A stretch of 64,000 nucleotides of DNA from Octopus sinensis (Eukaryota): contig NC_043025.1 in the NCBI RefSeq assembly GCF_006345805.1, positions 4,960,001 through 5,024,000 of the forward strand, in the 5' to 3' direction. The translations under genes and the position numbers were made by a program. Under the pieces are notes generated by a model. The model saw only the letters and a list, made by a program, of their open reading frames with translations. It had not been told where the DNA came from and searched no databases. Positions 2,111 to 12,694 of this stretch are shown here, piece by piece. Each line of letters begins with the position of its first letter. The stretch's first letter is position 1.

Positions 2111-2616
2111 GCCTTTGCCAGCTTGGACGCTTTAAGTCATCGAAACCGACCGCTTGCCAGACCAGCAAATGTGTGGTCCATTTTGAAACTACACATGGCT
2201 ATAAACAAAGAATTTCTTTTGAGATAACCAGAGAGGAGGGAATTATCACCAGAGATCTTTGACACCATTCTTTGTGTTTACTCCACACATACCACCATGT
2301 ACAAGCTCCACGAAAAACCAATGTATTTTTCTTAACAGAATTATTTGTACCTTTCGAACACAAGTACCATTATTTTCTTCCTTTTTTTTTCTTAGTTTTT
2401 GCCATTCAATACTTTCTCCAAGTGTTTCTTTAATATAACAATATTTAGCAGTTATCCCGGAAAATATTTATAGAAAACAATTGCGTCCCCCAATTACTCG
2501 CGCAAGTCGAGGAATCCCTGTAGTGTCCTACATTTTGGAATACTTGCAATTTGTATTTTTACTGCTTACGTTTGCTTCGCTTGCTAAATTTCTGAAATTA
2601 AAACATTTTAATATGT

Positions 2617-3049
2617 GGCGATCTTTCGTCTCTAGTAGACCTTTACGTCGATTTCCGTAAAAACAATTTTTCTTTTTACATATGGGCTTGCGGGAACTTT
2701 TGAAGTAATATACATACATATACACATACACCGAGTAAAAAATTTCAGTTATCTCTTTCTTTCACACATTACTCTGTCTCTCCACACACACTAACAGAAG
2801 CACTTCATTTACACAACATACTGTCTGTCTCCCACACCCCATCAAACACACACACACACACACACACATGTACATCAATGCTTCCCATGCACGGTAACTT
2901 CAAGAGAACTTCCCTCGTCATACAATCGCTTTCTCTTAGTCTCTTTCGCTCTCATTACTTCAAAAGTTCCCGCAAGCCCATATGTAAAAATAAAAAAAAA
3001 ATTTTTTACGGAAATCGACGGAAAGGTCTACTAGAGACGAAAGATTGCC
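2617..3049 (+). mobile_element. Merlin-like MITE family 2, copy a (~430 bp, ~90-bp TIRs)
   Basis: TIR ggcgatctttcgtctctagtagacc...gggaacttttgaagtaat and its reverse complement ending aagattgcc. Other copies at 4859-10580 and 12053-12476. Confidence 0.85.
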
Positions 3050-3104
3050 AATTTCTGAAATTAAGCATTTTAATATGTAAAACAAACTTTAAATTATTAC
3101 ATAT

Positions 3105-3363
3105 TGTGGTGTTGGCGGTGTTATGGGTGTTGGTGGGGAGGAAGACAGATGAGGTGGGCGGAAGCAAGGCTTGCAGGGGCATGCGTGGGCAGGAAGGATC
3201 CGGGTCAGCAAGCACGTGGGTTCAGTTCCAGCAAAGAGCGCAGAGCGACAAGACATTTCGAATTCGCGAGAGTGACCGCTGATTTCGCCGAGGTGAGGCC
3301 TTTTTGTAATTCTTTCTCCCGTTGCTTCTTTTTCTGTTGTCCTTTTCCTCCAACCACACTACA
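3105..3363. mobile_element. Solo LTR, copy a
   Basis: TG...CA termini with short inverted ends (tgtggtgt / acactaca) and a perfect 5-bp TSD catat (3100-3104, 3364-3368). Homologous to 11676-11874. Confidence 0.75.
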
Positions 3364-3394
3364 CATATACTATACGTTAATGCAAAAAATATTG

Positions 3395-3663
3395 TTTATT
3401 GACGATCTTCAAAATGATCACAGCATCAGTGGAAAGTTCAGCGCAAACTTGCTAAAGCAGTTACCAAAGGCTATTAAGACCAAACACTAAGAAAAACTGA
3501 TGAATGGGGTCTTGTTTCGTTATGACAATGCTTCAGCACACAAGTCCTTGCTTTCAGTGACTGGCTTTGAACTGGTTGATCTCCCGCCCTATGTTAGTGA
3601 TTTGGTTCCATCTGGTTATCATCTGTTTCTCGACATGAAAAAACATTCGGCTGGGCACCAGTA
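3395..3663 (+). pseudogene. Mariner (Tc1/mariner) transposase catalytic-region fragment
   Basis: Translation ...NLLKQLPKAIKTKH*EKLMNGVLFRYDNASAHKS...GFELVDLPPYVSDLVPSGYHLFLDMKK matches the mariner HQDNAPAH and HPPYSPDLAPSDYHLF motifs, with stops. Confidence 0.8.
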
Positions 3664-4625
3664 CCTATTTCTTTATTACCCTCAAGGGGCTAAACATAGA
3701 TGGGACAAACAAGGACAGACATACGTATTAAGTCGATTACATCGACCCAAGTGCGTAACTGGTACTTAATTTATCGACCCCGGAAGGATGAAAGGCAAAG
3801 TCGACCTCGGCGGAATTTGAACTCAGAACGTAGCGGCAGATGAAATACCTATTTCTTTATTATCCACAAGGGGCTAAACATAGAGGGGACAAACAAGGAC
3901 AGACATAGGTATTAAGTCGATTACATCGACCCCAGTGCGTAACTGGTGCTTAATTTATCGACCCTGAAAGGATGAAAGGCAAAGTCGACCTCGGCGGAAT
4001 TTGAAGTCACAACGTAACGACAGACGAAATACCTATTTCTTTATTACCCACAAGGGGCTAAACATAGAGGGGACAAACAAGGACAGACATAGGTATTAAG
4101 TCGATTCCATCGACCCCAGTGCGTAACTGGTACTTAATTTATCGACCCCGAAAGGATGAAAGGCAAAGTCGACCTCGGCGGAATTTGAACTCAGAACATA
4201 GCGGCAGATGAAATACCTATTTCTTTATTACCCACAAGGGGCTAAACATAGAAGGGACAAATAAGGACAGACATAGGTATTAAGTCGATTACATCGACCC
4301 AAGTGCGTAACTGGTACTTAATTTATCGACCCCGGAAGGATGAAAGGCAAAGTCGACCTCGGCGGAATTTGAACTCAGAACGTAGCGGCAGATGAAATAA
4401 CTATTTCTTTATTATCCACAAGGGGCTAAACATAGAGGGGACAAACAAGGACAGACATACGTATTAAGTCGATTACATCGACCCCAGTGCGTAACTGATG
4501 CTTAATTTATCGACCCCGGAAGGATGAAAGGCAAAGTCGACCTCGGCGGAATTTGAACTCACAACGTAATGGCAGGCGAAATACTGCAAAGCATTTCGCC
4601 CGGCGTGCTAACGCTTCTGCCAGCC
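3662..4625 (-). mobile_element. tRNA-derived SINE family B, head-to-tail pentamer
   Basis: Five ~184-bp units starting near 3662, 3846, 4030, 4214 and 4398. Only the last carries the head. Confidence 0.85.
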
Positions 4626-6313
4626 CCACACTTACCACCATGTACAAGCTCCACGAAAAACCAATGTATTTTTCTTAACAGAATTATTTGTATTTTTCGT
4701 ACACAAGCACCACCATTTTCTTCCTTTTTTTGGTTAGTTTTTGTCATATTGTGTCCTACATTTTGGAATACTTGCAATTTGTATTTTTACTGCTTACGTT
4801 TGCTTCGCTTGATAAATTTCTGAAATTAAACATTTTAATATGTAAAACAAACTTCATAGGCAATCTTTCGTCTCTAGTAGACCTTTCCGTCGATTGCCGT
4901 AAAAATTTTTTTTTTTTTACATATGGGCTTGCGGGAACTTTTGAAGTAATGAGAGCGAAAGAGACTAAGAGAAAGCGGGTACTTGTCTATTGTCGTGGTC
5001 CCGGTTTTGCACACGCGAATTCGCGCGCGTCAGACGTAGGTACTCGATACTCGAGATCCTACGAGGTGACTTGCGCATGCGCAGTGCGCGATTCGCGCAT
5101 GCGCGTTAACACCCCCCCCCCCGGAAAAAAAAAAGGATTTTTTTTAAAGATACCTTTCTGCTTTTTAAGACAAAAAGGTGTTGGATTTCACTAAAAATAT
5201 ATATATATGTGTGTGTATGTGTGTATATATAACATATTCAATTTATCACAAAAAAATTACATAGTCGCTTTCCTCGCGGATTTACAGATAAATGAATTAA
5301 TTACTATTTTACAGAATAAAATTAATTAATGAATTAATTATATAAATTAAATAATTCTTGAAAATTAATTATTATTAATACTCGAGATCCTACGAGGTGA
5401 CTTGCGCATGCGCAGTGCGCGATTCGCGCATGCGCGTTAACCCCCCCCCCCGGGAAAAAAAAAGGATTTTTTTAAAGATACCTTTAGTCGCTTTCCTCGC
5501 GGATTTACAGATAAATGAATTAATTACTATTTTACTGAATAAAATTAATGAATTAATTATATAAATTAAATAATTCTTGAAAATTAATTATTATTAATAA
5601 TATTTTTTGAACAAAGTAAAAAGTAATTACTTTTTTTTTACAGAAACGCGAACGGGGAATTTTCAGTTTAAAGTTTATAAATAAATACATTTCATGTGTA
5701 ATGTAAAATAGTAGTCAATTAATTAAATACCTTCTTTTTCTGGGGTATTATTTTGTTCAAACTCGTCACATATTTGTAACTTTTCGATGTAAACCTTTCA
5801 ATGTAAGTCTTAATTAAAAAGTTGCGGCAGCTTAGCAGAAATGTCACGTTTAATTTCTACCATGCAATGGTTTCAATACACGCGGGAGATCATACCCCTT
5901 CAAACTTTATACCATTCTGAAAGATGTTTCAGAATATTCATCACACGACCGTTTTCATTTTGTCCAAATATTTTTTTCCACAGAAACTCATCAAAATTGT
6001 GGCGATTTTATGACAGTGTAGCAAATTAGTAATCAACTAATTAAATACCTTCTTTTTCTGGGGTATTATTCTTGTTCAAACTCGTCACATATTTGTAACT
6101 TTTCGATGTAAACCTTTCAATGTAAGTCTTAATTAAAAAGTTGCGGCAGCTTAGCAGAAATGTCACGTTATAATTTCTACCATGCAATGGTTTCAATACA
6201 CGCGGGAGATCATACCCCTTCAAACTTTATACCATTCTGAGAGATGTTTCAGAATATTCATCACACGACCGTTTTCATTTTGTCCAAAAATACACGCGGG
6301 AGATCATACCCCT

Positions 6314-7196
6314 TCAAACTCTATACCATTCTGAAAGATGTTTCAGAATATTCATCAAGCAATCGTATGCAGTTTGCCCATACTGTTTTCCTCAGAAACT
6401 CATCAAGGTACGAGTCCACCATGGTGGAATGTACCCCCATCATCGTTTTAAATTTTCTTTTGGCATTCTTCCAGTAACATTCCACAGAATTTGTGTGTAC
6501 ACCTGTTAGGGGATCCACAAAATTCTGGGAATGGTTTACTGTGAAATGGATGTATTTTGGTGTGTCACATCCATTTCTGCAATACCATTATAGGCGGGCC
6601 AGCAATCCGAATGAATTGTTGTGCCCGGTCTAATAAATTTTTTGATGATGGGTAGCAGAGTTTCCGAGGAACGGTCAGCTACGAACAGTATGAAGCCTTT
6701 TTTGTCTTCTCTGTCGTAACCTCCAAAGACCCATCTCTCTTGTGGCGTTCTCCGTCTATTGTATTTTCTCTTACACATCAGACTTTCATCTACTTCAACA
6801 ACGTGTCCGACACCACCAATTTGGTATGGATTGTTGATTAGATTGTTGCTACAGATATCTCGCATGTATTGATACCATTGAATAACGGTAGATTTTGACA
6901 ATCCAGTCATTGCTATTGCTCCTGTTTTGTTAGGTTACTGCCCCAACAATATATAACATGAATGAAATCGTGCAGTTTCAATCTGCTATTTTCGAGATAC
7001 GATTTCTTTGTAATGACTCTTTTTCCCCTTTGTGAGTTGGGCAGCGAAAATTTTTTTCCTGGTTGTGTTTTATAAGAGTCATCTCTCTATGGCATTTTGA
7101 GCAAATTGGAGTTGAGGAACTCAACACTTTTTTGTCCTTTAGGAATGAATAGATACTGTCAAAGTCTTTTACGATACTTTCTATCTCATACAACAT
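6314..7196 (-). pseudogene. Merlin/ISXO2-like DDE transposase (~290 aa) interrupted by about four frameshifts
   Basis: N-terminal CSKC...FRCPTH Zn-ribbon-like segment; TGLSKSTVIQWY; VEVDES (D), WVFGG, IHSDCWPAY (D); TVNHSQNFVDPLTGVHTNSVECYW (E); YLDEFL...MNILKHLSEWYRV*. Assembled from ORFs 6978-7196, 6536-6910 and 6321-6518 plus linking frames. Confidence 0.9.
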
Positions 7197-7964
7197 TTTT
7201 TCTTAATTTAACTCACAGTTCAACTGGTGAAGATAAACTGAAACTAAAGTTATTTTCAGTATCAGTTAGCTGAGTATCAGTTAGCTGAGTATCAGTCAGT
7301 TAGCTCTGATTGGTTAGATTTTAGAACTTTCTCTGTCCCCTCTTTCAAACTAATTTTTGTTGTGGGGGGGGGAGAAAGATGAACGATTTAAAATAAATAT
7401 ATCTTAATTGTAGTGTGAGAAAAGTATATATATTCTGATGATAAAATATATTCTTTCAAAAACATTTGTAGTCCTACTATGAAAGATTGTTTTGGGCTGA
7501 AACCCAAGTTAACGAAAATACATGAATAAGGATTTGACTGTCATGATGTTGAGTCTTATTAGATTCTTGTCCGATTCAGTATATTTGTCATGTGCTTTCT
7601 GAAGTAGGCAATAAAAACCTTATAAACAAACTGTTATCTACATAATACTGTGGTAATTAGACAAACATTAACTGAAATTAATTATGCCTTCCTAACAGAA
7701 AATGACATAATATGTATTTATTATGTGAACATGTAAAGGAAACTGAAAATTGTGATATGTTCCTCTCATTACTGGCACTTATTAACTTGAGAAAAATAAA
7801 AAGGCCACATATAGAATGAGATATTCGAAAATAAAAAAATGTTAAAAGATACTCCTCGGAATTAAAATCATGACAAAGATTTTCAAAATCCTTTTTTGCG
7901 ATAGATGGAGATTGCCTGAAGTAAATAAGGGAGAAGGAGAGAGAAGACAGCAGAAGGAACAGCA

Positions 7965-9520
7965 TTGATGAGTTTCTATGGAAGGAAATATTTGGACAAA
8001 ATGAAAACGGTCGTGTGATGAATATTCTGAAACATCTTTCAGAATGGTATAAAGTTTGAAGGGGTATGATCTCCCGCGTGTATTGAAACCATTGCATGGT
8101 AGAAATTATAACGTGACATTTCTGCTAAGCTGCCGCAACTTTTTATTAAGACTTACATTGAAAGGTTTACATCGAAAAGTTACAAATATGTGACGAGTTT
8201 GAACAAGAATAATACCCCAGAAAAAGAAGGTATTTAATTAGTTGATTACTAATTTGCTACACTGTCATAAAATCGCCACAATTTTGATGAGTTTCTGTGG
8301 AAAAAAATATTTGGACAAAATGAAAACGGTCGTGTGATGAATATTCTGAAACATCTTTCAGAATGGTATAAAGTTTGAAGGGGTATGATCTCCCGCGTGT
8401 ATTGAAACCATTGCATGGTAGAAATTATAACGTGACATTTCTGCTAAGCTGCCGCAACTTTTTAATTAGACTTACATTGAAAGGTTTTACATCGAAAAGT
8501 TACAAATATGTGACGAGTTTGAACAAGAATAATACCCCAGAAAAAGAAGGTATTTAATTAGTTGATTACTAATTTGCTACACTGTCATAAAATCGCCACA
8601 ATTTTGATGAGTTTCTGTGGAAAAAAAATATTGGACAAAATGAAAACGGTCGTGTGATGAATATTCTGAAACATCTTTCAGAATGGTATAAAGTTTGAAG
8701 GGGTATGATCTCCCGCGTGTATTGAAACCATTGCATGGTAGAAATTATAACGTGACATTTCTGCTAAGCTGCCGCAACTTTTAATTAAGACTGACATTGA
8801 AAGGTTTACATCGAAAAGTTACAAATATGTGACGAGTTTGAACAAGAATAATACCCCAGAAAAAGAAGGTATTTAATTAGTTGATTACTAATTTGCTACA
8901 CTGTCATAAAATCGCCACATTTTGATGAGTTTTCTGTGAAAAAAATATTTGGACAAAATGAAAACGGTCGTGTGATGAATATTCTGAAACATCTTTCAGA
9001 ATGGTATAAAGTTTGAAGGGGTATGATCTCCCGTGTATTGAAACCATTGCATGGTAGAAATTATAACGTGACATTTCTGCTAAGCTGCCGCAACTTTTAA
9101 TAAGACTTACATTGAAAGGTTTACATCGAAAAGTTACAAATATGTGACGAGTTTGAACAAGAATAATACCCCAGAAAAAGAAGGTATTTAATTAGTTGAT
9201 TACTAATTTGCTACACTGTCATAAAATCGCCACAATTTTGATGAGTTTCTGTGGAAAAAAAATATTGGACAAAATGAAAACGGTCGTCTTGTGATGAATA
9301 TTCTGAAACATCTTTCAGAATGGTATAAAGTTTGAAGGGGTATGATCTCCCGCGTGTATTGAAACCATTGCATGGTAGAAATTATAACGTGACATTTCTG
9401 CTAAGCTGCCGCAACTTTTAATTAAGACTTACATTGAAAGGTTTACATCGAAAAGTTACAAATATGTGACGAGTTTGAACAAGAATAATACCCCAGAAAA
9501 AGAAGGTATTTAATTAATTG
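7965..9520 (+). repeat. Five tandem ~318-bp units in the right Merlin arm (about two inverted copies at 5720-6355 in the left arm)
   Basis: Units begin ttgatgagtttc near 7965, 8284, 8604, 8921 and 9238. Confidence 0.9.
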
Positions 9521-10906
9521 ACTACTATTTTACATTACACATGAAATGTATTTATTTATAAACTTTAAACTGAAAATTCCCCGTTCGCGTTTCTGTAAAA
9601 AAAAAGTAATTACTTTTTACTTTGTTCAAAAAATATTATTAATAATAATTAATTTTCAAGAATTATTTAATTTATAATTAATTCATTAATTTTATTCAGT
9701 AAAATAGTAATTAATTCATTTATCTGTAAATCCGCGAGAGGAAAGCGACTAAAGGTATCTTTAAAAAATCCTTTTTTTTCCGGGGGGGGGGGGGGGGTGG
9801 TGGGTAACGCGGGCATGCGCGAATCGCGCACTGCGCATGCGCAAGTCACCTCGTAGGATCTCGAGTATTAATAATAATTAATTTTCAAGAATTATTTAAT
9901 TTATATAATTAATTCATTAATTAATTTTATTCTGTAAAATAGTAATTAATTCATTTATCTGTAAATCCGCGAGGAAGCGACTATGTAATTTTTTTGTGAT
10001 AAATTGAATATGTTATATATACACACATACACATATATTTTTAGTGAAATCCAACACCTTTTTGTCTTAAAAAGCAGAGAAAGGTATCTTTAAAAAAAAT
10101 CCTTTTTTTTTCCGGGGGGGGGGGGGGTGTTAACGCGCATGCGCGAATCGCGCACTGCGCATGCGCAAGTCACCTCGTAGGATCTCGAGTATCGAGTACC
10201 TACGTCTGACGCGCGCGCGCGCGTGAATTCGCGTGTGCAAAACCGGGACCACGACAATAGACAAGTACCGAGAAAGCGATTGTATGACGAGGTAAGTTCT
10301 TTTGAAGTTACCGTGCATGGGAAGCATTGATGTACATGTGTGTGTGTGTTTGATGGGGTGTGGGAGACAGACAGTATGTTGTGTAAGTGAAGTGCTTCTG
10401 TTAGTGTGTGTGGAGAGACAGAGTAATGTGTGAAAGAAAGAGATAACTGAAATTTTTTACTCGGTGTATGTGTATATGTATGTATATTACTTTAAAAGTT
10501 CCCGCAAGCCCATATGTAAAAAAAAAAAAAAAAAATTTACAGAAATCGACGGAAAGGTCTACTAGAGACGAAAGATCGCCGGCTGAATTAACAATCTCTC
10601 TCTCGAACAGGCATTCTCTGCTACGTCTGATTGTAATTATATGATGTAACCTGCTGCCATGTTCAATTGAGTTCCTGGTCTCGCTTTTCTGAAGAACTCC
10701 CAGCATGCAGTTTTATTCTATCGTGTTGGCCTCTTTCACACAAGAACATTCTTCTTCCACGTCCACCAGCAGAATAGACCAAACTCAATGCTGTCACCTC
10801 TTCATGCTATCTTATTGGGTTGGCAATTAAGTTCCTACCGTTTTTTTTTAAGTTTTGGAATTTATTGCGTTTTTAAAGTTTGGAATCTATTTTTTTTCGA
10901 GAATTC

Positions 10907-11874: not shown

Positions 11875-12052
11875 CAGAGAAAATGGAATGCTCCCACACT
11901 GCTATAGAGAAGCATCTTCACTCGATGGGAAAGGTTCAGAAGTATGGAGCATGGGTTCCGCATGCTTTAAGTGACAACAAAAATCAACGAGCCACAATAT
12001 CCGCCGGTTTGCTTATTCGTCACCGCTCGGCTTATGGACACAAGCAATAATT

Positions 12053-12476
12053 GGCGATCTTTCGTCTCTAGTAGACCTTTCCGTCGATTTCTGTAAAATA
12101 TTTTTTTTTTTTTACATATGGGCTTGTGGGAACTTTTGAAGTAATATACATACATATACACATACACCGAATAAAATATTTCAGCTATCTCTTTCTTTCA
12201 CACATTCCTCTGTCTCTTCACACACACTAACAGAAGCACTTCACTTACACAACATACTGTCTGTCTCCCACACCCTATCAAACACACACACACACACATG
12301 TACATCAATGCTTCCCATGCACGGTAACTTCAAAAGAACTTCCCTCGTCATACAATCGCTTTCTCTTAGTCAGTTTCGCTCTCATTACTTCAAAAGTTCC
12401 CGCAAGCCCATATGTAGAAAAAAAAATTTTTTTTACAGAAATCGACGGAAAGGTCTACTAGAGACGAAAGATCGCC
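12053..12476 (+). mobile_element. Merlin-like MITE family 2, copy c
   Basis: GG/CC ends, ~90-bp TIRs, perfect 8-bp TSD caataatt (12045-12052, 12477-12484). Confidence 0.9.
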
Positions 12477-12694
12477 CAATAATTTCTTTACCGAATCATT
12501 GCTAGCAACGAAAAATGGTCCCTGTACATCAATATGAAGCAACGTAAGGAATGGCTTAGCTCCGGCAAACAAGCGGCCACTGTGCATGAAACAAGATCTT
12601 CATCCGCGTAAAACGATGACTGGTTCATGACCTCATCCTTTGACATTATTTACCTTGTGAAAACCAAGTACACAGTGACTTTACAAGCTGAAAT

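What the first reader, a model, noticed from the sequence alone, without database searches (positions are those of the whole stretch)
4978..10269. Merlin transposon whose giant inverted arms are built from tandem copies of its own transposase 3' end
Seen: the arms are ~1.4 kb and ~2.3 kb. Each ~318-bp subrepeat begins with sequence translating as DEFLWKKIFGQNENGRVMNILKHLSEWYKV*, clearly homologous to the true C-terminus DEFL..KQYGQTAYDCLMNILKHLSEWYRV*, followed by 3' flank. There are five copies in the right arm, antisense to the gene, and about two in the left. Established: described Merlin TIRs are tens to a few hundred bp, often with short tandem motifs. Inference: the element was rebuilt from two 3' ends (a foldback/Galileo-like architecture in the Merlin superfamily). 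Read-through transcripts could fold into dsRNA over the coding 3' end and 3' UTR, giving built-in silencing. The perfect TSD and symmetric ends show it moved in this form.
Basis: partly seen in the sequence, partly recalled or inferred. Interest (0 to 1): 0.78.

Follow-up and report, generated by a model that had tools for sequence, protein, structure and literature searches.

The report
Octopus Merlin transposon with foldback arms
This is a dead copy of a young, recently mobile Merlin DNA transposon of Octopus sinensis whose inverted end-repeats have grown to 1-4.5 kb by copying the last 93 bases of its own transposase gene plus 3' flank into both ends and multiplying that piece in tandem. 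It is a real and unusual variant of the known "foldback-like" transposon architecture, not a new kind of element.

Summary
Window 4978-10269 is a 5,292-bp Merlin element with a perfect 9-bp target-site duplication. Paralogous uninterrupted copies of the repeat it landed in prove a clean insertion. The left arm is 1.3-1.4 kb and the right arm 2.3 kb. Each arm has a ~70-bp terminus, two ~325-bp subrepeats, and then 319-bp units: about 2 beside the gene's 3' end and 4.9 at the 5' side. Each unit is the last 93 bp of the transposase CDS plus 226 bp of 3' flank.

Seven other full copies in the genome (97-99% identical) share this layout, with 1-12 units per arm. Five of the eight have perfect 8-9-bp TSDs and one keeps an intact 294-aa DDE transposase. 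The window copy has four frameshifts.

The two arms of each element evolve in concert: 56 mirrored variable sites and no arm-specific site. An 82% relative has ~620-bp arms that stop 38 bp after the stop codon. An older copy has 1,452-bp arms that include 650 bp of transposase.

Best reading: arm-to-arm sequence transfer moved the repeat boundary into the gene, and tandem amplification followed. The units are not under coding constraint, and abundant non-autonomous relatives lack them. Self-silencing by hairpin RNA is untested. Verdict: a new variant (Merlin) of the Galileo/foldback-like kind.

The parts
4969..4977 (.). Left copy of the 9-bp target-site duplication, GAGAAAGCG
   Evidence: Paralogous empty sites carry one copy.
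4978..5047 (+). Left terminus (outermost TIR), starting 5'-GGTACTTGTCTATTGTCGTGGTCCC and containing a (CG)n tract
   Evidence: The same terminus is found at 263 candidate places in the genome, of which 40 were scored at >=92% identity.
5048..5704 (+). Left distal arm: two ~325-331-bp subrepeats, each with two GCGCATGCGC palindromes and poly-C/poly-A tracts, followed by ~130 bp
   Evidence: (families D9, D10, D15). All seven GCGCATGCGC matches in the window lie in the two distal arms, against 0 expected by chance.
5705..5994 (-). 3'-arm unit, outermost (unit positions 1-292), in gene orientation
   Evidence: 97.6% to the reference unit. It clusters with the outermost units of both arms of other copies.
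5995..6291 (-). 3'-arm unit (unit positions 24-320), joined to the gene's end at an irregular 120/24 junction that all eight copies share
6289..6406 (-). Real 3' end of the transposase gene plus the first 27 bp after the stop codon (stop TGA at 6316-6314); homologous to unit positions 1-120 at 86-88%
   Evidence: E=2.5e-30
6314..7196 (-). Transposase CDS remnant. It is a 294-aa single-exon ORF in intact copies. Here it is broken by two 1-bp deletions, one 2-bp insertion and one 2-bp deletion.
   Evidence: PF12762 E=1.5e-18 for this copy with the frames joined and 1.5e-20 for the intact copy. DDE triad at D137, D198, E239.
7197..7467 (-). Gene-proximal upstream region shared with older relatives. 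It includes a 15-bp tandem repeat at 7258-7296 that has one extra copy in this element.
7468..7964 (-). 497-bp spacer found only in this young family (11 places in the genome, 98-100% identical)
7965..9531 (+). 5'-arm array of 4.9 units of 319 bp, antisense to the gene: 7965-8283, 8284-8603, 8604-8922, 8922-9237 and 9238-9531 (positions 1-292). The inner boundary falls at the same nucleotide (TTGATGAG) as the unit phase and as the start of homology with the gene.
9532..10191 (-). Right distal arm, the mirror image of 5048-5704
   Evidence: 94.5%; I3, I5, I12
10192..10269 (-). Right terminus, the mirror image of 4978-5047 with a longer (CG)n tract
10270..10278 (.). Right copy of the 9-bp target-site duplication, GAGAAAGCG

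Best explanation
Window 4978-10269 is an inactivated copy of a young Merlin (IS1016/IS1595-like DDE) cut-and-paste transposon family of Octopus sinensis. Its terminal inverted repeats have become foldback-like, 1.0-4.5 kb per arm.

Each arm consists of a ~70-bp terminus, two ~325-bp subrepeats, and a variable array (1-12) of a 319-bp unit. The unit is a copy of the last 93 bp of the transposase CDS plus 226 bp of its 3' flank.

Proposed origin (inferred). The two arms of an element continually exchange sequence, by intramolecular gene conversion or recombinational repair between inverted repeats. The ancestral arms already reached to just behind the stop codon. A transfer tract, or an aberrant repair event, then carried the boundary ~130 bp further inward, copying the gene's end into the 5' arm. 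The innermost ~319 bp was then amplified in tandem by unequal exchange or slippage, and the array was mirrored into both arms.

The element transposes in this form, making 8-9-bp duplications. The unit arrays are most likely a neutral structural by-product. They are neither coding nor required for mobility.
For: Shown directly:
- Merlin identity. PF12762 matches at E=1.5e-18 and 1.5e-20. The D137/D198/E239 triad is conserved in 97-98% of 89 homologues. The ends start 5'-GG and the TSDs are 8-9 bp. The closest database protein is an Octopus sinensis protein at 98% identity.
- Real insertion. The joined flanks match uninterrupted paralogues that carry one copy of the TSD.
- Family-wide architecture. 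Eight full copies at 97-99% share the same order of parts and the same inner boundaries. Unit counts (3' arm/5' arm) are 2/5, 2/2, ~5/12, 3/7, 7/3, 7/3, 4/2 and 2/1, and element lengths are 3.9-8.4 kb. Perfect TSDs occur in five of the eight. One copy has an intact 294-aa ORF. Internal-deletion derivatives exist.
- Unit is the gene's 3' end plus flank. It matches the young gene's end at 86-88% over positions 1-120. It matches the gene end plus flank of older copies at 83-87% over positions 1-319. The unit peptide hits the C-terminal positions of a Merlin profile.
- Concerted evolution of the arms. In a tree of the 16 arms, the two arms of an element are sisters in 6 of 8 elements. Arms never group by side. 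In ~1 kb there are 0 arm-specific columns and 56 columns that vary among elements but are identical in both arms of every element. These include four substitutions in the terminal 20 bp. In the unit tree, the outermost units of both arms cluster together across copies.
- Graded series of repeat boundaries. In L042 (82% relative) the arms are ~620 bp and start 38 bp after the stop codon. In the young family the boundary lies 93 bp inside the CDS. In L038 the arms are 1,452 bp at 99.5% identity and include 650 bp of the CDS.
- Recurrent tandem duplication at this spot. L040 has a private 181-bp x3 array of the gene's end. A 62%-identical relative has ordinary 365-bp TIRs with one-sided tandem repeats in its 3' flank.
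- Units are not coding and not needed for mobility. Diversity is 0.033 in the coding-derived part against 0.024 in the flank part. All units of three copies carry TGG>TGA. Non-autonomous elements with the same termini lack the unit.

Precedent: in Galileo, TIRs lengthen by tandem-repeat expansion and by recruiting adjacent internal sequence (PMC3573991).
Against: - The transfer mechanism itself (gene conversion versus regeneration of one end from the other during repair) is inferred from sequence patterns, not observed.
- The exact coincidence of the unit phase with the 5' arm's inner boundary fits a discrete breakpoint event at least as well as gradual boundary creep.
- Only eight full copies were compared. 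Some copies may share mirrored sites by descent from already-mirrored ancestors. This still requires mirroring, but fewer events.
- Neutrality of the units is argued from lack of coding constraint and from MITEs lacking them. A non-coding role, such as secondary transposase binding or RNA, is not excluded.
- Unit counts rest on one assembly. One copy (L035) has 433-bp inverted flanks and no TSD, which could be a foldback misassembly.
Confidence: 0.62

Rival explanations
1. One-step rebuild from two 3' ends. An aberrant repair or foldback event replaced the whole original 5' end with an inverted copy of the 3' end. The breakpoint lay in the CDS at the LDEF codons, and tandem amplification came afterwards.
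For: - L038 is exactly such a product. Its 1,452-bp arms are 99.5% identical, include 650 bp of transposase, and are flanked by a 9-bp TSD.
- The inner boundary of the 5' arm, the unit phase and the start of homology with the gene all coincide at TTGATGAG.
- The 5' and 3' arms share no distinguishing site.
Against: - The 82% relative L042 already has symmetric arms up to 38 bp from the stop codon, so no wholesale replacement is needed.
- Lineage-specific substitutions are mirrored in both arms after the family diversified. This shows continuing transfer rather than a single event.
- L038's TSD would also survive an in-situ rearrangement, so it does not prove that form transposed. L038 is a single copy.
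Confidence: 0.25
2. The arrays are functional. Either they are extra transposase-binding or synapsis sites that raise transposition efficiency, or they are a source of hairpin/double-stranded RNA from read-through transcripts that feeds small-RNA self-silencing.
For: - The arms are near-perfect inverted repeats, so any transcript spanning both would fold.
- The distal arms carry GCGCATGCGC palindromes found nowhere else in the window. These could act as promoters.
- Subterminal tandem repeats of Galileo hold secondary transposase-binding sites (PMC3573991).
- From general knowledge: read-through dsRNA from Tc1 TIRs, and the Mu killer inverted duplication, silence their families.
Against: - No terminal 10-mer (<=1 mismatch) recurs anywhere in the arms, against 3.7 hits expected in shuffles.
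- Abundant non-autonomous relatives with the same termini lack the unit.
- Unit number varies from 1 to 12 without pattern.
- There is no sequence constraint on the coding-derived part.
- No RNA or small-RNA data were available.
Confidence: 0.1
3. Assembly artefact: a collapsed or chimeric foldback created by long-read assembly across an inverted repeat.
For: One copy (L035, C2:39.2 Mb) has flanks that are exact inverted complements for 433 bp and has no TSD. Another copy (L032) lies on a 33.5-kb unplaced scaffold without a TSD.
Against: - Eight loci on different chromosomes share the same architecture and the same junctions.
- Five of them have perfect TSDs.
- The window copy's empty site is reconstructed precisely.
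- Deletion derivatives retain the 5'-arm unit.
Confidence: 0.03

Closest known systems
Merlin superfamily of DNA transposons (Feschotte 2004; surveyed in PMC8101967)
   Same: DDE_Tnp_IS1595 transposase of ~300 aa in a single ORF, 5'-GG termini, 8-9-bp TSDs, and co-existing MITE-like derivatives. Internal tandem repeats have been noted in some Merlin families.
   Different: Described Merlin TIRs are 24-462 bp. Here the arms are 1.0-4.5 kb, internally repetitive, and include the last 31 codons of the transposase gene on both ends. No foldback-like Merlin was found in the searched literature.
Galileo (P superfamily) of Drosophila, a foldback-like transposon (PMC3573991, PMC4168063)
   Same: Long internally repetitive TIRs. 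The number of tandem repeats differs between the two TIRs and between copies. TIRs are extended by recruiting sequence adjacent to the TIR. The transposase is encoded between the arms.
   Different: It belongs to a different superfamily, with a THAP/P transposase and 7-bp TSD. In Galileo the recruited pieces are the non-coding spacers F1/F2, and the longest TIRs occur only in non-autonomous copies. Here the recruited and amplified piece contains coding sequence, and the longest arms are on transposase-bearing copies, one of which has an intact ORF.
Classical Foldback elements: Drosophila FB, Tetris (PMC4079207), sea-urchin TU
   Same: Arms made largely of tandem subrepeats. Units within an element are homogenised. 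MITE relatives share only the terminal sequence.
   Different: Those elements mostly lack a transposase and are assigned to Mutator. Their subrepeats are not derived from the transposase gene. No satellite-like arrays of this unit were found outside the elements.
Arm-to-arm gene conversion and boundary shifts in other large inverted repeats: plastid IR expansion, Y-chromosome palindromes, poxvirus ITRs (from general knowledge)
   Same: Mirrored substitutions in both arms, and inward or outward movement of the repeat boundary that duplicates the ends of adjacent genes.
   Different: Those are chromosomal or organellar repeats, not mobile elements. The comparison concerns mechanism only.
Mu killer of maize (from general knowledge)
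   Same: The older copy L038 is an inverted duplication of part of a transposase gene, like the hairpin-forming Muk locus.
   Different: No evidence of transcription or silencing is available here. L038 keeps a complete second copy of the ORF and has normal termini and a TSD.

Membership tests
Merlin superfamily | Transposase with the IS1016/IS1595-type DDE domain (Pfam DDE_Tnp_IS1595) | tested here: met
   PF12762 matches at E=1.5e-18 (window copy, frames joined) and E=1.5e-20, 74 bits against a 27-bit cut-off (intact copy). There are 781 homologues at E<=1e-10, and nearly all of the 120 listed are annotated with PF12762.
Merlin superfamily | Conserved D-D-E catalytic triad in three conserved blocks | tested here: met
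   D137 (VEVDES), D198 (HSDCW) and E239 (NSVECYW) are conserved in 97-98% of 89 aligned homologues. Catalytic activity itself was not tested.
Merlin superfamily | 8- or 9-bp target-site duplication | tested here: met
   The window copy has a 9-bp TSD. Four other young copies have 8-9 bp and L038 has 9 bp. The empty site is confirmed.
Merlin superfamily | TIRs beginning with 5'-GG | tested here: met
   GGTACTTGT... at both ends of all copies
Merlin superfamily | TIR length in the described range (24-462 bp); a descriptive feature, not a defining one | tested here: not met
   The arms are 1.0-4.5 kb. This is the point of novelty, not grounds for exclusion.
Foldback-like architecture (Galileo type) | Very long TIRs (hundreds of bp to more than 1 kb) containing internal tandem repeats | tested here: met
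Foldback-like architecture (Galileo type) | Repeat number varies between the two arms and among copies | tested here: met
   1-12 units per arm, with the two arms of one element differing in seven of eight copies
Foldback-like architecture (Galileo type) | TIR extension by recruiting adjacent internal sequence | tested here: met
   The boundary positions form a series across L042, the young family and L038.
Foldback-like architecture (Galileo type) | P-superfamily THAP transposase and 7-bp TSD (true family membership) | tested here: not met
   The transposase is Merlin type and the TSD is 8-9 bp. The resemblance is in architecture only.
Classical Foldback (FB) elements | Arms make up nearly the whole element, with little or no unique middle domain | tested here: not met
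   A ~1.6-1.7-kb unique middle (gene plus upstream region plus spacer) is present in all full copies.

The most novel reading that the evidence does not exclude
The foldback arms are not inert. Transcription across an arm pair would yield hairpin RNA covering the transposase 3' end and 3' UTR. Such transcription could start at the GCGCATGCGC-rich distal subrepeats or be read-through from outside. The family would then carry a built-in trigger for its own small-RNA silencing. The single older copy L038, an inverted duplication of 650 bp of transposase, would act as a Mu-killer-like master silencer. Unit copy number would tune the dose.
Probability: 0.1. Interest if true: 0.7.

Novelty: new variant of a known kind. 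Interest (0 to 1): 0.5.

Why it matters
- It extends the foldback-like (Galileo-type) architecture to a third DNA-transposon superfamily, Merlin. This supports the view that foldback structure is a convergent outcome of repeat dynamics rather than a lineage trait.
- Unlike most foldback elements, the family still has a transposase-bearing copy with an intact ORF. It also shows clear intermediates: repeat boundaries 38 bp behind the stop codon, 93 bp inside the CDS, and 650 bp or more inside the CDS.
- It shows direct sequence evidence for arm-to-arm concerted evolution. This makes it a tractable natural series for studying how TIRs grow.
- Long inverted repeats of this size are also potential fragile or rearrangement sites in the octopus genome. 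One copy sits in a 433-bp flank palindrome.
- It does not change any basic understanding of transposition.

Tried and rejected
- Looked for repeats of the terminal sequence inside the arms, as candidate extra transposase-binding sites. No 10-mer of the terminal 50 bp recurs with <=1 mismatch, whereas shuffled arms give 3.7 hits.
- Searched Pfam with the unit peptide. There was no meaningful hit, because PF12762 ends at residue ~271, near the start of the unit-encoded part. A custom profile of 89 homologues was used instead.
- Tried to define the ends and arm structure of the more distant octopus Merlin families (L043-L047, 72-74% DNA identity). No termini or gene-end inverted repeats were recognisable in the stretches fetched. 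In L043 and L044, the termini hits near the gene belong to a separate 1.6-1.8-kb non-autonomous element.
- Looked for TSDs on three non-autonomous elements (L048-L050). None was found, so their end pairing is uncertain.
- Considered that the units might be a dispersed satellite. All strong unit hits lie inside family copies. Only a 72-73% match to unit positions 159-308 is dispersed in the genome, probably old TIR-derived MITEs.
- Considered alternative C-terminal exons or a coding role for the units. This was rejected because of stop codons, frameshifts and equal or higher diversity in the coding-derived part.
- One genome search failed and was repeated.

Full report
**What is in the window.**
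Reading 4850-10650 together with repeat finding shows a discrete 5,292-bp element at 4978-10269. It ends in GGTACTTGTCTATTGTCGTGGTCCC... and the reverse complement, and it is flanked by GAGAAAGCG on both sides (4969-4977 and 10270-10278).

I joined the two flanks with one copy of that 9-mer and searched the whole genome. The joined sequence matched uninterrupted copies of an abundant ~430-bp repeat with ~93-nt inverted ends at 97-98% across the junction. There were 1,420 candidates, of which 40 were scored. The four paralogues examined each contain a single GAGAAAGCG. The element is therefore a clean insertion with a 9-bp target-site duplication into a MITE-like host repeat.

**The gene.**
On the minus strand, 7196->6314 encodes a Merlin-type transposase (PF12762 DDE_Tnp_IS1595, E=1.5e-18 with the frames joined). 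In this copy it is broken by two 1-bp deletions, a 2-bp insertion and a 2-bp deletion, seen by alignment with 12 related copies. At least one other copy, L034 at C18:25.59 Mb, has an intact single-exon ORF of 294 aa (PF12762 E=1.5e-20). Its D137, D198 and E239 are conserved in 97-98% of 89 homologues. The best database match, at 98% identity, is an uncharacterised protein of Octopus sinensis on a 164,836,235-bp contig, the same length as G000 contig C4. The genome is therefore O. sinensis.

**The arms.**
- Left arm: 4978-6291 (1,314 bp).
- Right arm: 7965-10269 (2,305 bp).
- From the outside in, each arm holds three parts: a ~70-bp terminus with a (CG)n tract; ~657 bp made of two ~325-331-bp subrepeats; and then 319-bp units. 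The subrepeats are rich in GCGCATGCGC palindromes and homopolymers. All seven GCGCATGCGC matches in the 64-kb window lie here.
- The 5' (right) arm has 4.9 units at 7965-9531, 96% matches.
- The 3' (left) arm has two partial units, positions 1-292 and 24-320. They follow directly on the gene's real end (6289-6406), which is itself 86-88% identical to unit positions 1-120.
- The unit is the last 93 bp of the CDS, from the LDEF codons to the stop, plus 226 bp of 3' flank. Older copies of the family (L038, L039, L041) match it over the full 1-319 with their single, contiguous gene end plus flank at 83-87%.
- The unit peptide LDEFLWKKIFGQNENGRVMNILKHLSEWYKV aligns to the last 31 positions of a profile of 89 other Merlin transposases at 22.6 bits. 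The best of 200 shuffles scored 12.9.

**It is a family and it moves in this form.**
Whole-genome searches with the unit, the terminus, the gene and the spacer found seven further full copies at 97-99% gene identity. All have the same order of parts and the same junctions:
- the gene end joined to unit position 24;
- the outermost unit cut at position 292 in both arms;
- the 5' arm joined at unit position 1 to a 497-bp spacer that occurs only in this family.

Unit counts (3' arm/5' arm) are 2/5, 2/2, ~5/12, 3/7, 7/3, 7/3, 4/2 and 2/1. Elements are 3.9-8.4 kb and arms 1.0-4.5 kb. Five of the eight copies have perfect 8-9-bp duplications at unrelated sites. Internal-deletion derivatives (L051, L053) also exist. 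The terminus plus distal region occurs at 263 candidate places, 40 of them scored at >=92% identity. Most belong to 1.3-4-kb non-autonomous elements that lack the unit. An assembly artefact is therefore very unlikely for the architecture as such.

**How the arms evolve.**
I built a maximum-likelihood tree of the 16 outer arm sequences (~1 kb each). It pairs the two arms of the same element in 6 of 8 cases (support 90-99) and never groups arms by side. Column counts give no position that distinguishes 5' from 3' arms. There are 56 positions that vary among elements yet are identical in both arms of every element. These include the TCTATTGTCG / TTAATTGTCG / TTAATAATCG variants of the terminus.

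In the unit tree, all young units form one clade (support 100), separate from the real gene ends of older copies. The outermost truncated units of both arms cluster together across copies, and inner units cluster by subfamily or element. The arms are thus mirror images that are kept alike after lineages split. This implies arm-to-arm sequence transfer.

**Where the boundary came from.**
- The 82% relative L042 (3.2 kb) has ~620-bp arms that begin 38 bp after the stop codon and contain the flank-derived part of the unit but no coding sequence.
- The young family's boundary lies 93 bp inside the CDS.
- The older copy L038 has 1,452-bp arms at 99.5% identity that include 650 bp of the transposase, and it has a 9-bp TSD.
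- L040 carries a private 181-bp x3 tandem array of the gene's end.
- A 62%-identical relative from an ENA assembly has ordinary 365-bp TIRs and one-sided tandem repeats in its 3' flank.
- The 5' arm's inner boundary, the unit phase and the start of homology to the gene all fall at the same TTGATGAG.

My inference is as follows. Sequence transfer between already long arms, or one aberrant repair event, carried the repeat boundary into the gene. The innermost ~319 bp was then amplified in tandem. The array was mirrored into the gene-side arm, where it joins the true gene end through an irregular 120/24 junction.

**Function.**
The coding-derived part of the units is not conserved as coding sequence. 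Nucleotide diversity is 0.033 against 0.024 in the flank-derived part. Many units carry frameshifts or stops, and all units of three copies carry TGG>TGA. No terminal 10-mer recurs in the arms, and the abundant non-autonomous relatives do without the unit. I therefore regard the arrays as a neutral by-product of inverted-repeat dynamics.

**Comparison with what is known.**
Merlin TIRs are described as 24-462 bp with 5'-GG and 8-9-bp TSDs. Tandem repeats inside Merlins have been noted, but foldback-like arms have not (PMC8101967). A recent O. vulgaris repeat annotation lists Merlin only as two families with 11 recently active insertions (PMC13282606).

The closest architectural analogue is Galileo (P superfamily). 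Its TIRs lengthen by tandem-repeat expansion, independently in the two TIRs, and by recruiting adjacent spacer sequence. In Galileo the longest TIRs occur only in non-autonomous copies (PMC3573991). Foldback structure has been proposed to arise convergently by TIR elongation, and most cases are assigned to Mutator (PMC4079207).

This family meets all the defining Merlin features tested. It shares the architecture of Galileo-type elements but not their ancestry. It differs in that the amplified module contains coding sequence and in that transposase-bearing copies carry the longest arms.

**Verdict.**
This is a new variant of a known kind, of moderate interest.

Noticed in passing
window 4859-4977 + 10279-10580; other copies at 2616-3049 and 12047-12478: The Merlin sits inside a ~430-bp repeat with ~93-nt inverted ends (MITE-like). 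This repeat is extremely abundant and young: 1,420 candidate places, and the 40 scored are 95-98% identical.
   Followed up: partly
window 3662-4584: A tandem array of five 184-bp units (94% matches) lies just upstream of the host repeat. The same 184-bp units accompany the host repeat at three of the four paralogous loci examined (L054, L056, L057).
   Followed up: partly
L035 (G000:C2:39203500-39211500), flanks 456-888 and 7071-7505: This full copy has no TSD. Its two flanks are inverted complements of each other for 433 bp beyond the element ends. It is either a real palindromic rearrangement seeded by the long arms or a foldback misassembly.
   Followed up: partly
L038 (G000:C4:59162500-59170000), 2138-5461: An older family member (92% identity) is a true foldback. 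Its 1,452-bp arms are 99.5% identical and include 650 bp of the transposase 3' half. They surround a 425-bp centre. The element has a 9-bp TSD (ATATATTTC) and one complete 293-aa ORF. Structurally it resembles the Mu killer locus.
   Followed up: partly
L040 (G000:C14:52366500-52374000), 3004-3551: An independent, private tandem triplication (181-bp period) of the last ~59 bp of the gene region plus the first ~126 bp of the unit. The gene's 3' end is a recurrent site of tandem duplication.
   Followed up: no
window 5073-5104, 5404-5435, 9833-9842, 10135-10166: Seven GCGCATGCGC palindromes (NRF1/ewg-like consensus, recalled from memory) occur only in the distal subrepeats of the two arms, with none elsewhere in the 64 kb (0 expected). 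They may be promoter or binding elements.
   Followed up: no
window 7258-7296: A 15-bp tandem repeat (AGTATCAGTTAGCTG, 2.6 copies) lies upstream of the transposase ATG. This copy has one more repeat than all other family copies.
   Followed up: no
window 7468-7964 and 10 other genomic places: The 497-bp spacer between the 5' arm and the gene's upstream region occurs only in this family. It is 98-100% identical among copies, more uniform than the gene (97-99%). Its origin is unknown.
   Followed up: partly
many loci, e.g. G000:C4:78363208-78363354 and C1:172041195-172041342: Unit positions 159-308 (the flank-derived part) match many dispersed ~148-bp sequences at 72-73%. These are probably old MITEs derived from the ancestral long TIR.
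   Followed up: no
L043 and L044 (G000:C30:9.07 Mb and 9.41 Mb): Two near-identical loci each carry a 58%-aa-identical Merlin gene with a ~150-bp-period tandem array upstream and a ~460-bp palindrome downstream. Next to each lies a 1.6-1.8-kb non-autonomous element bearing this family's termini. This looks like a segmental duplication or a larger composite element.
   Followed up: no
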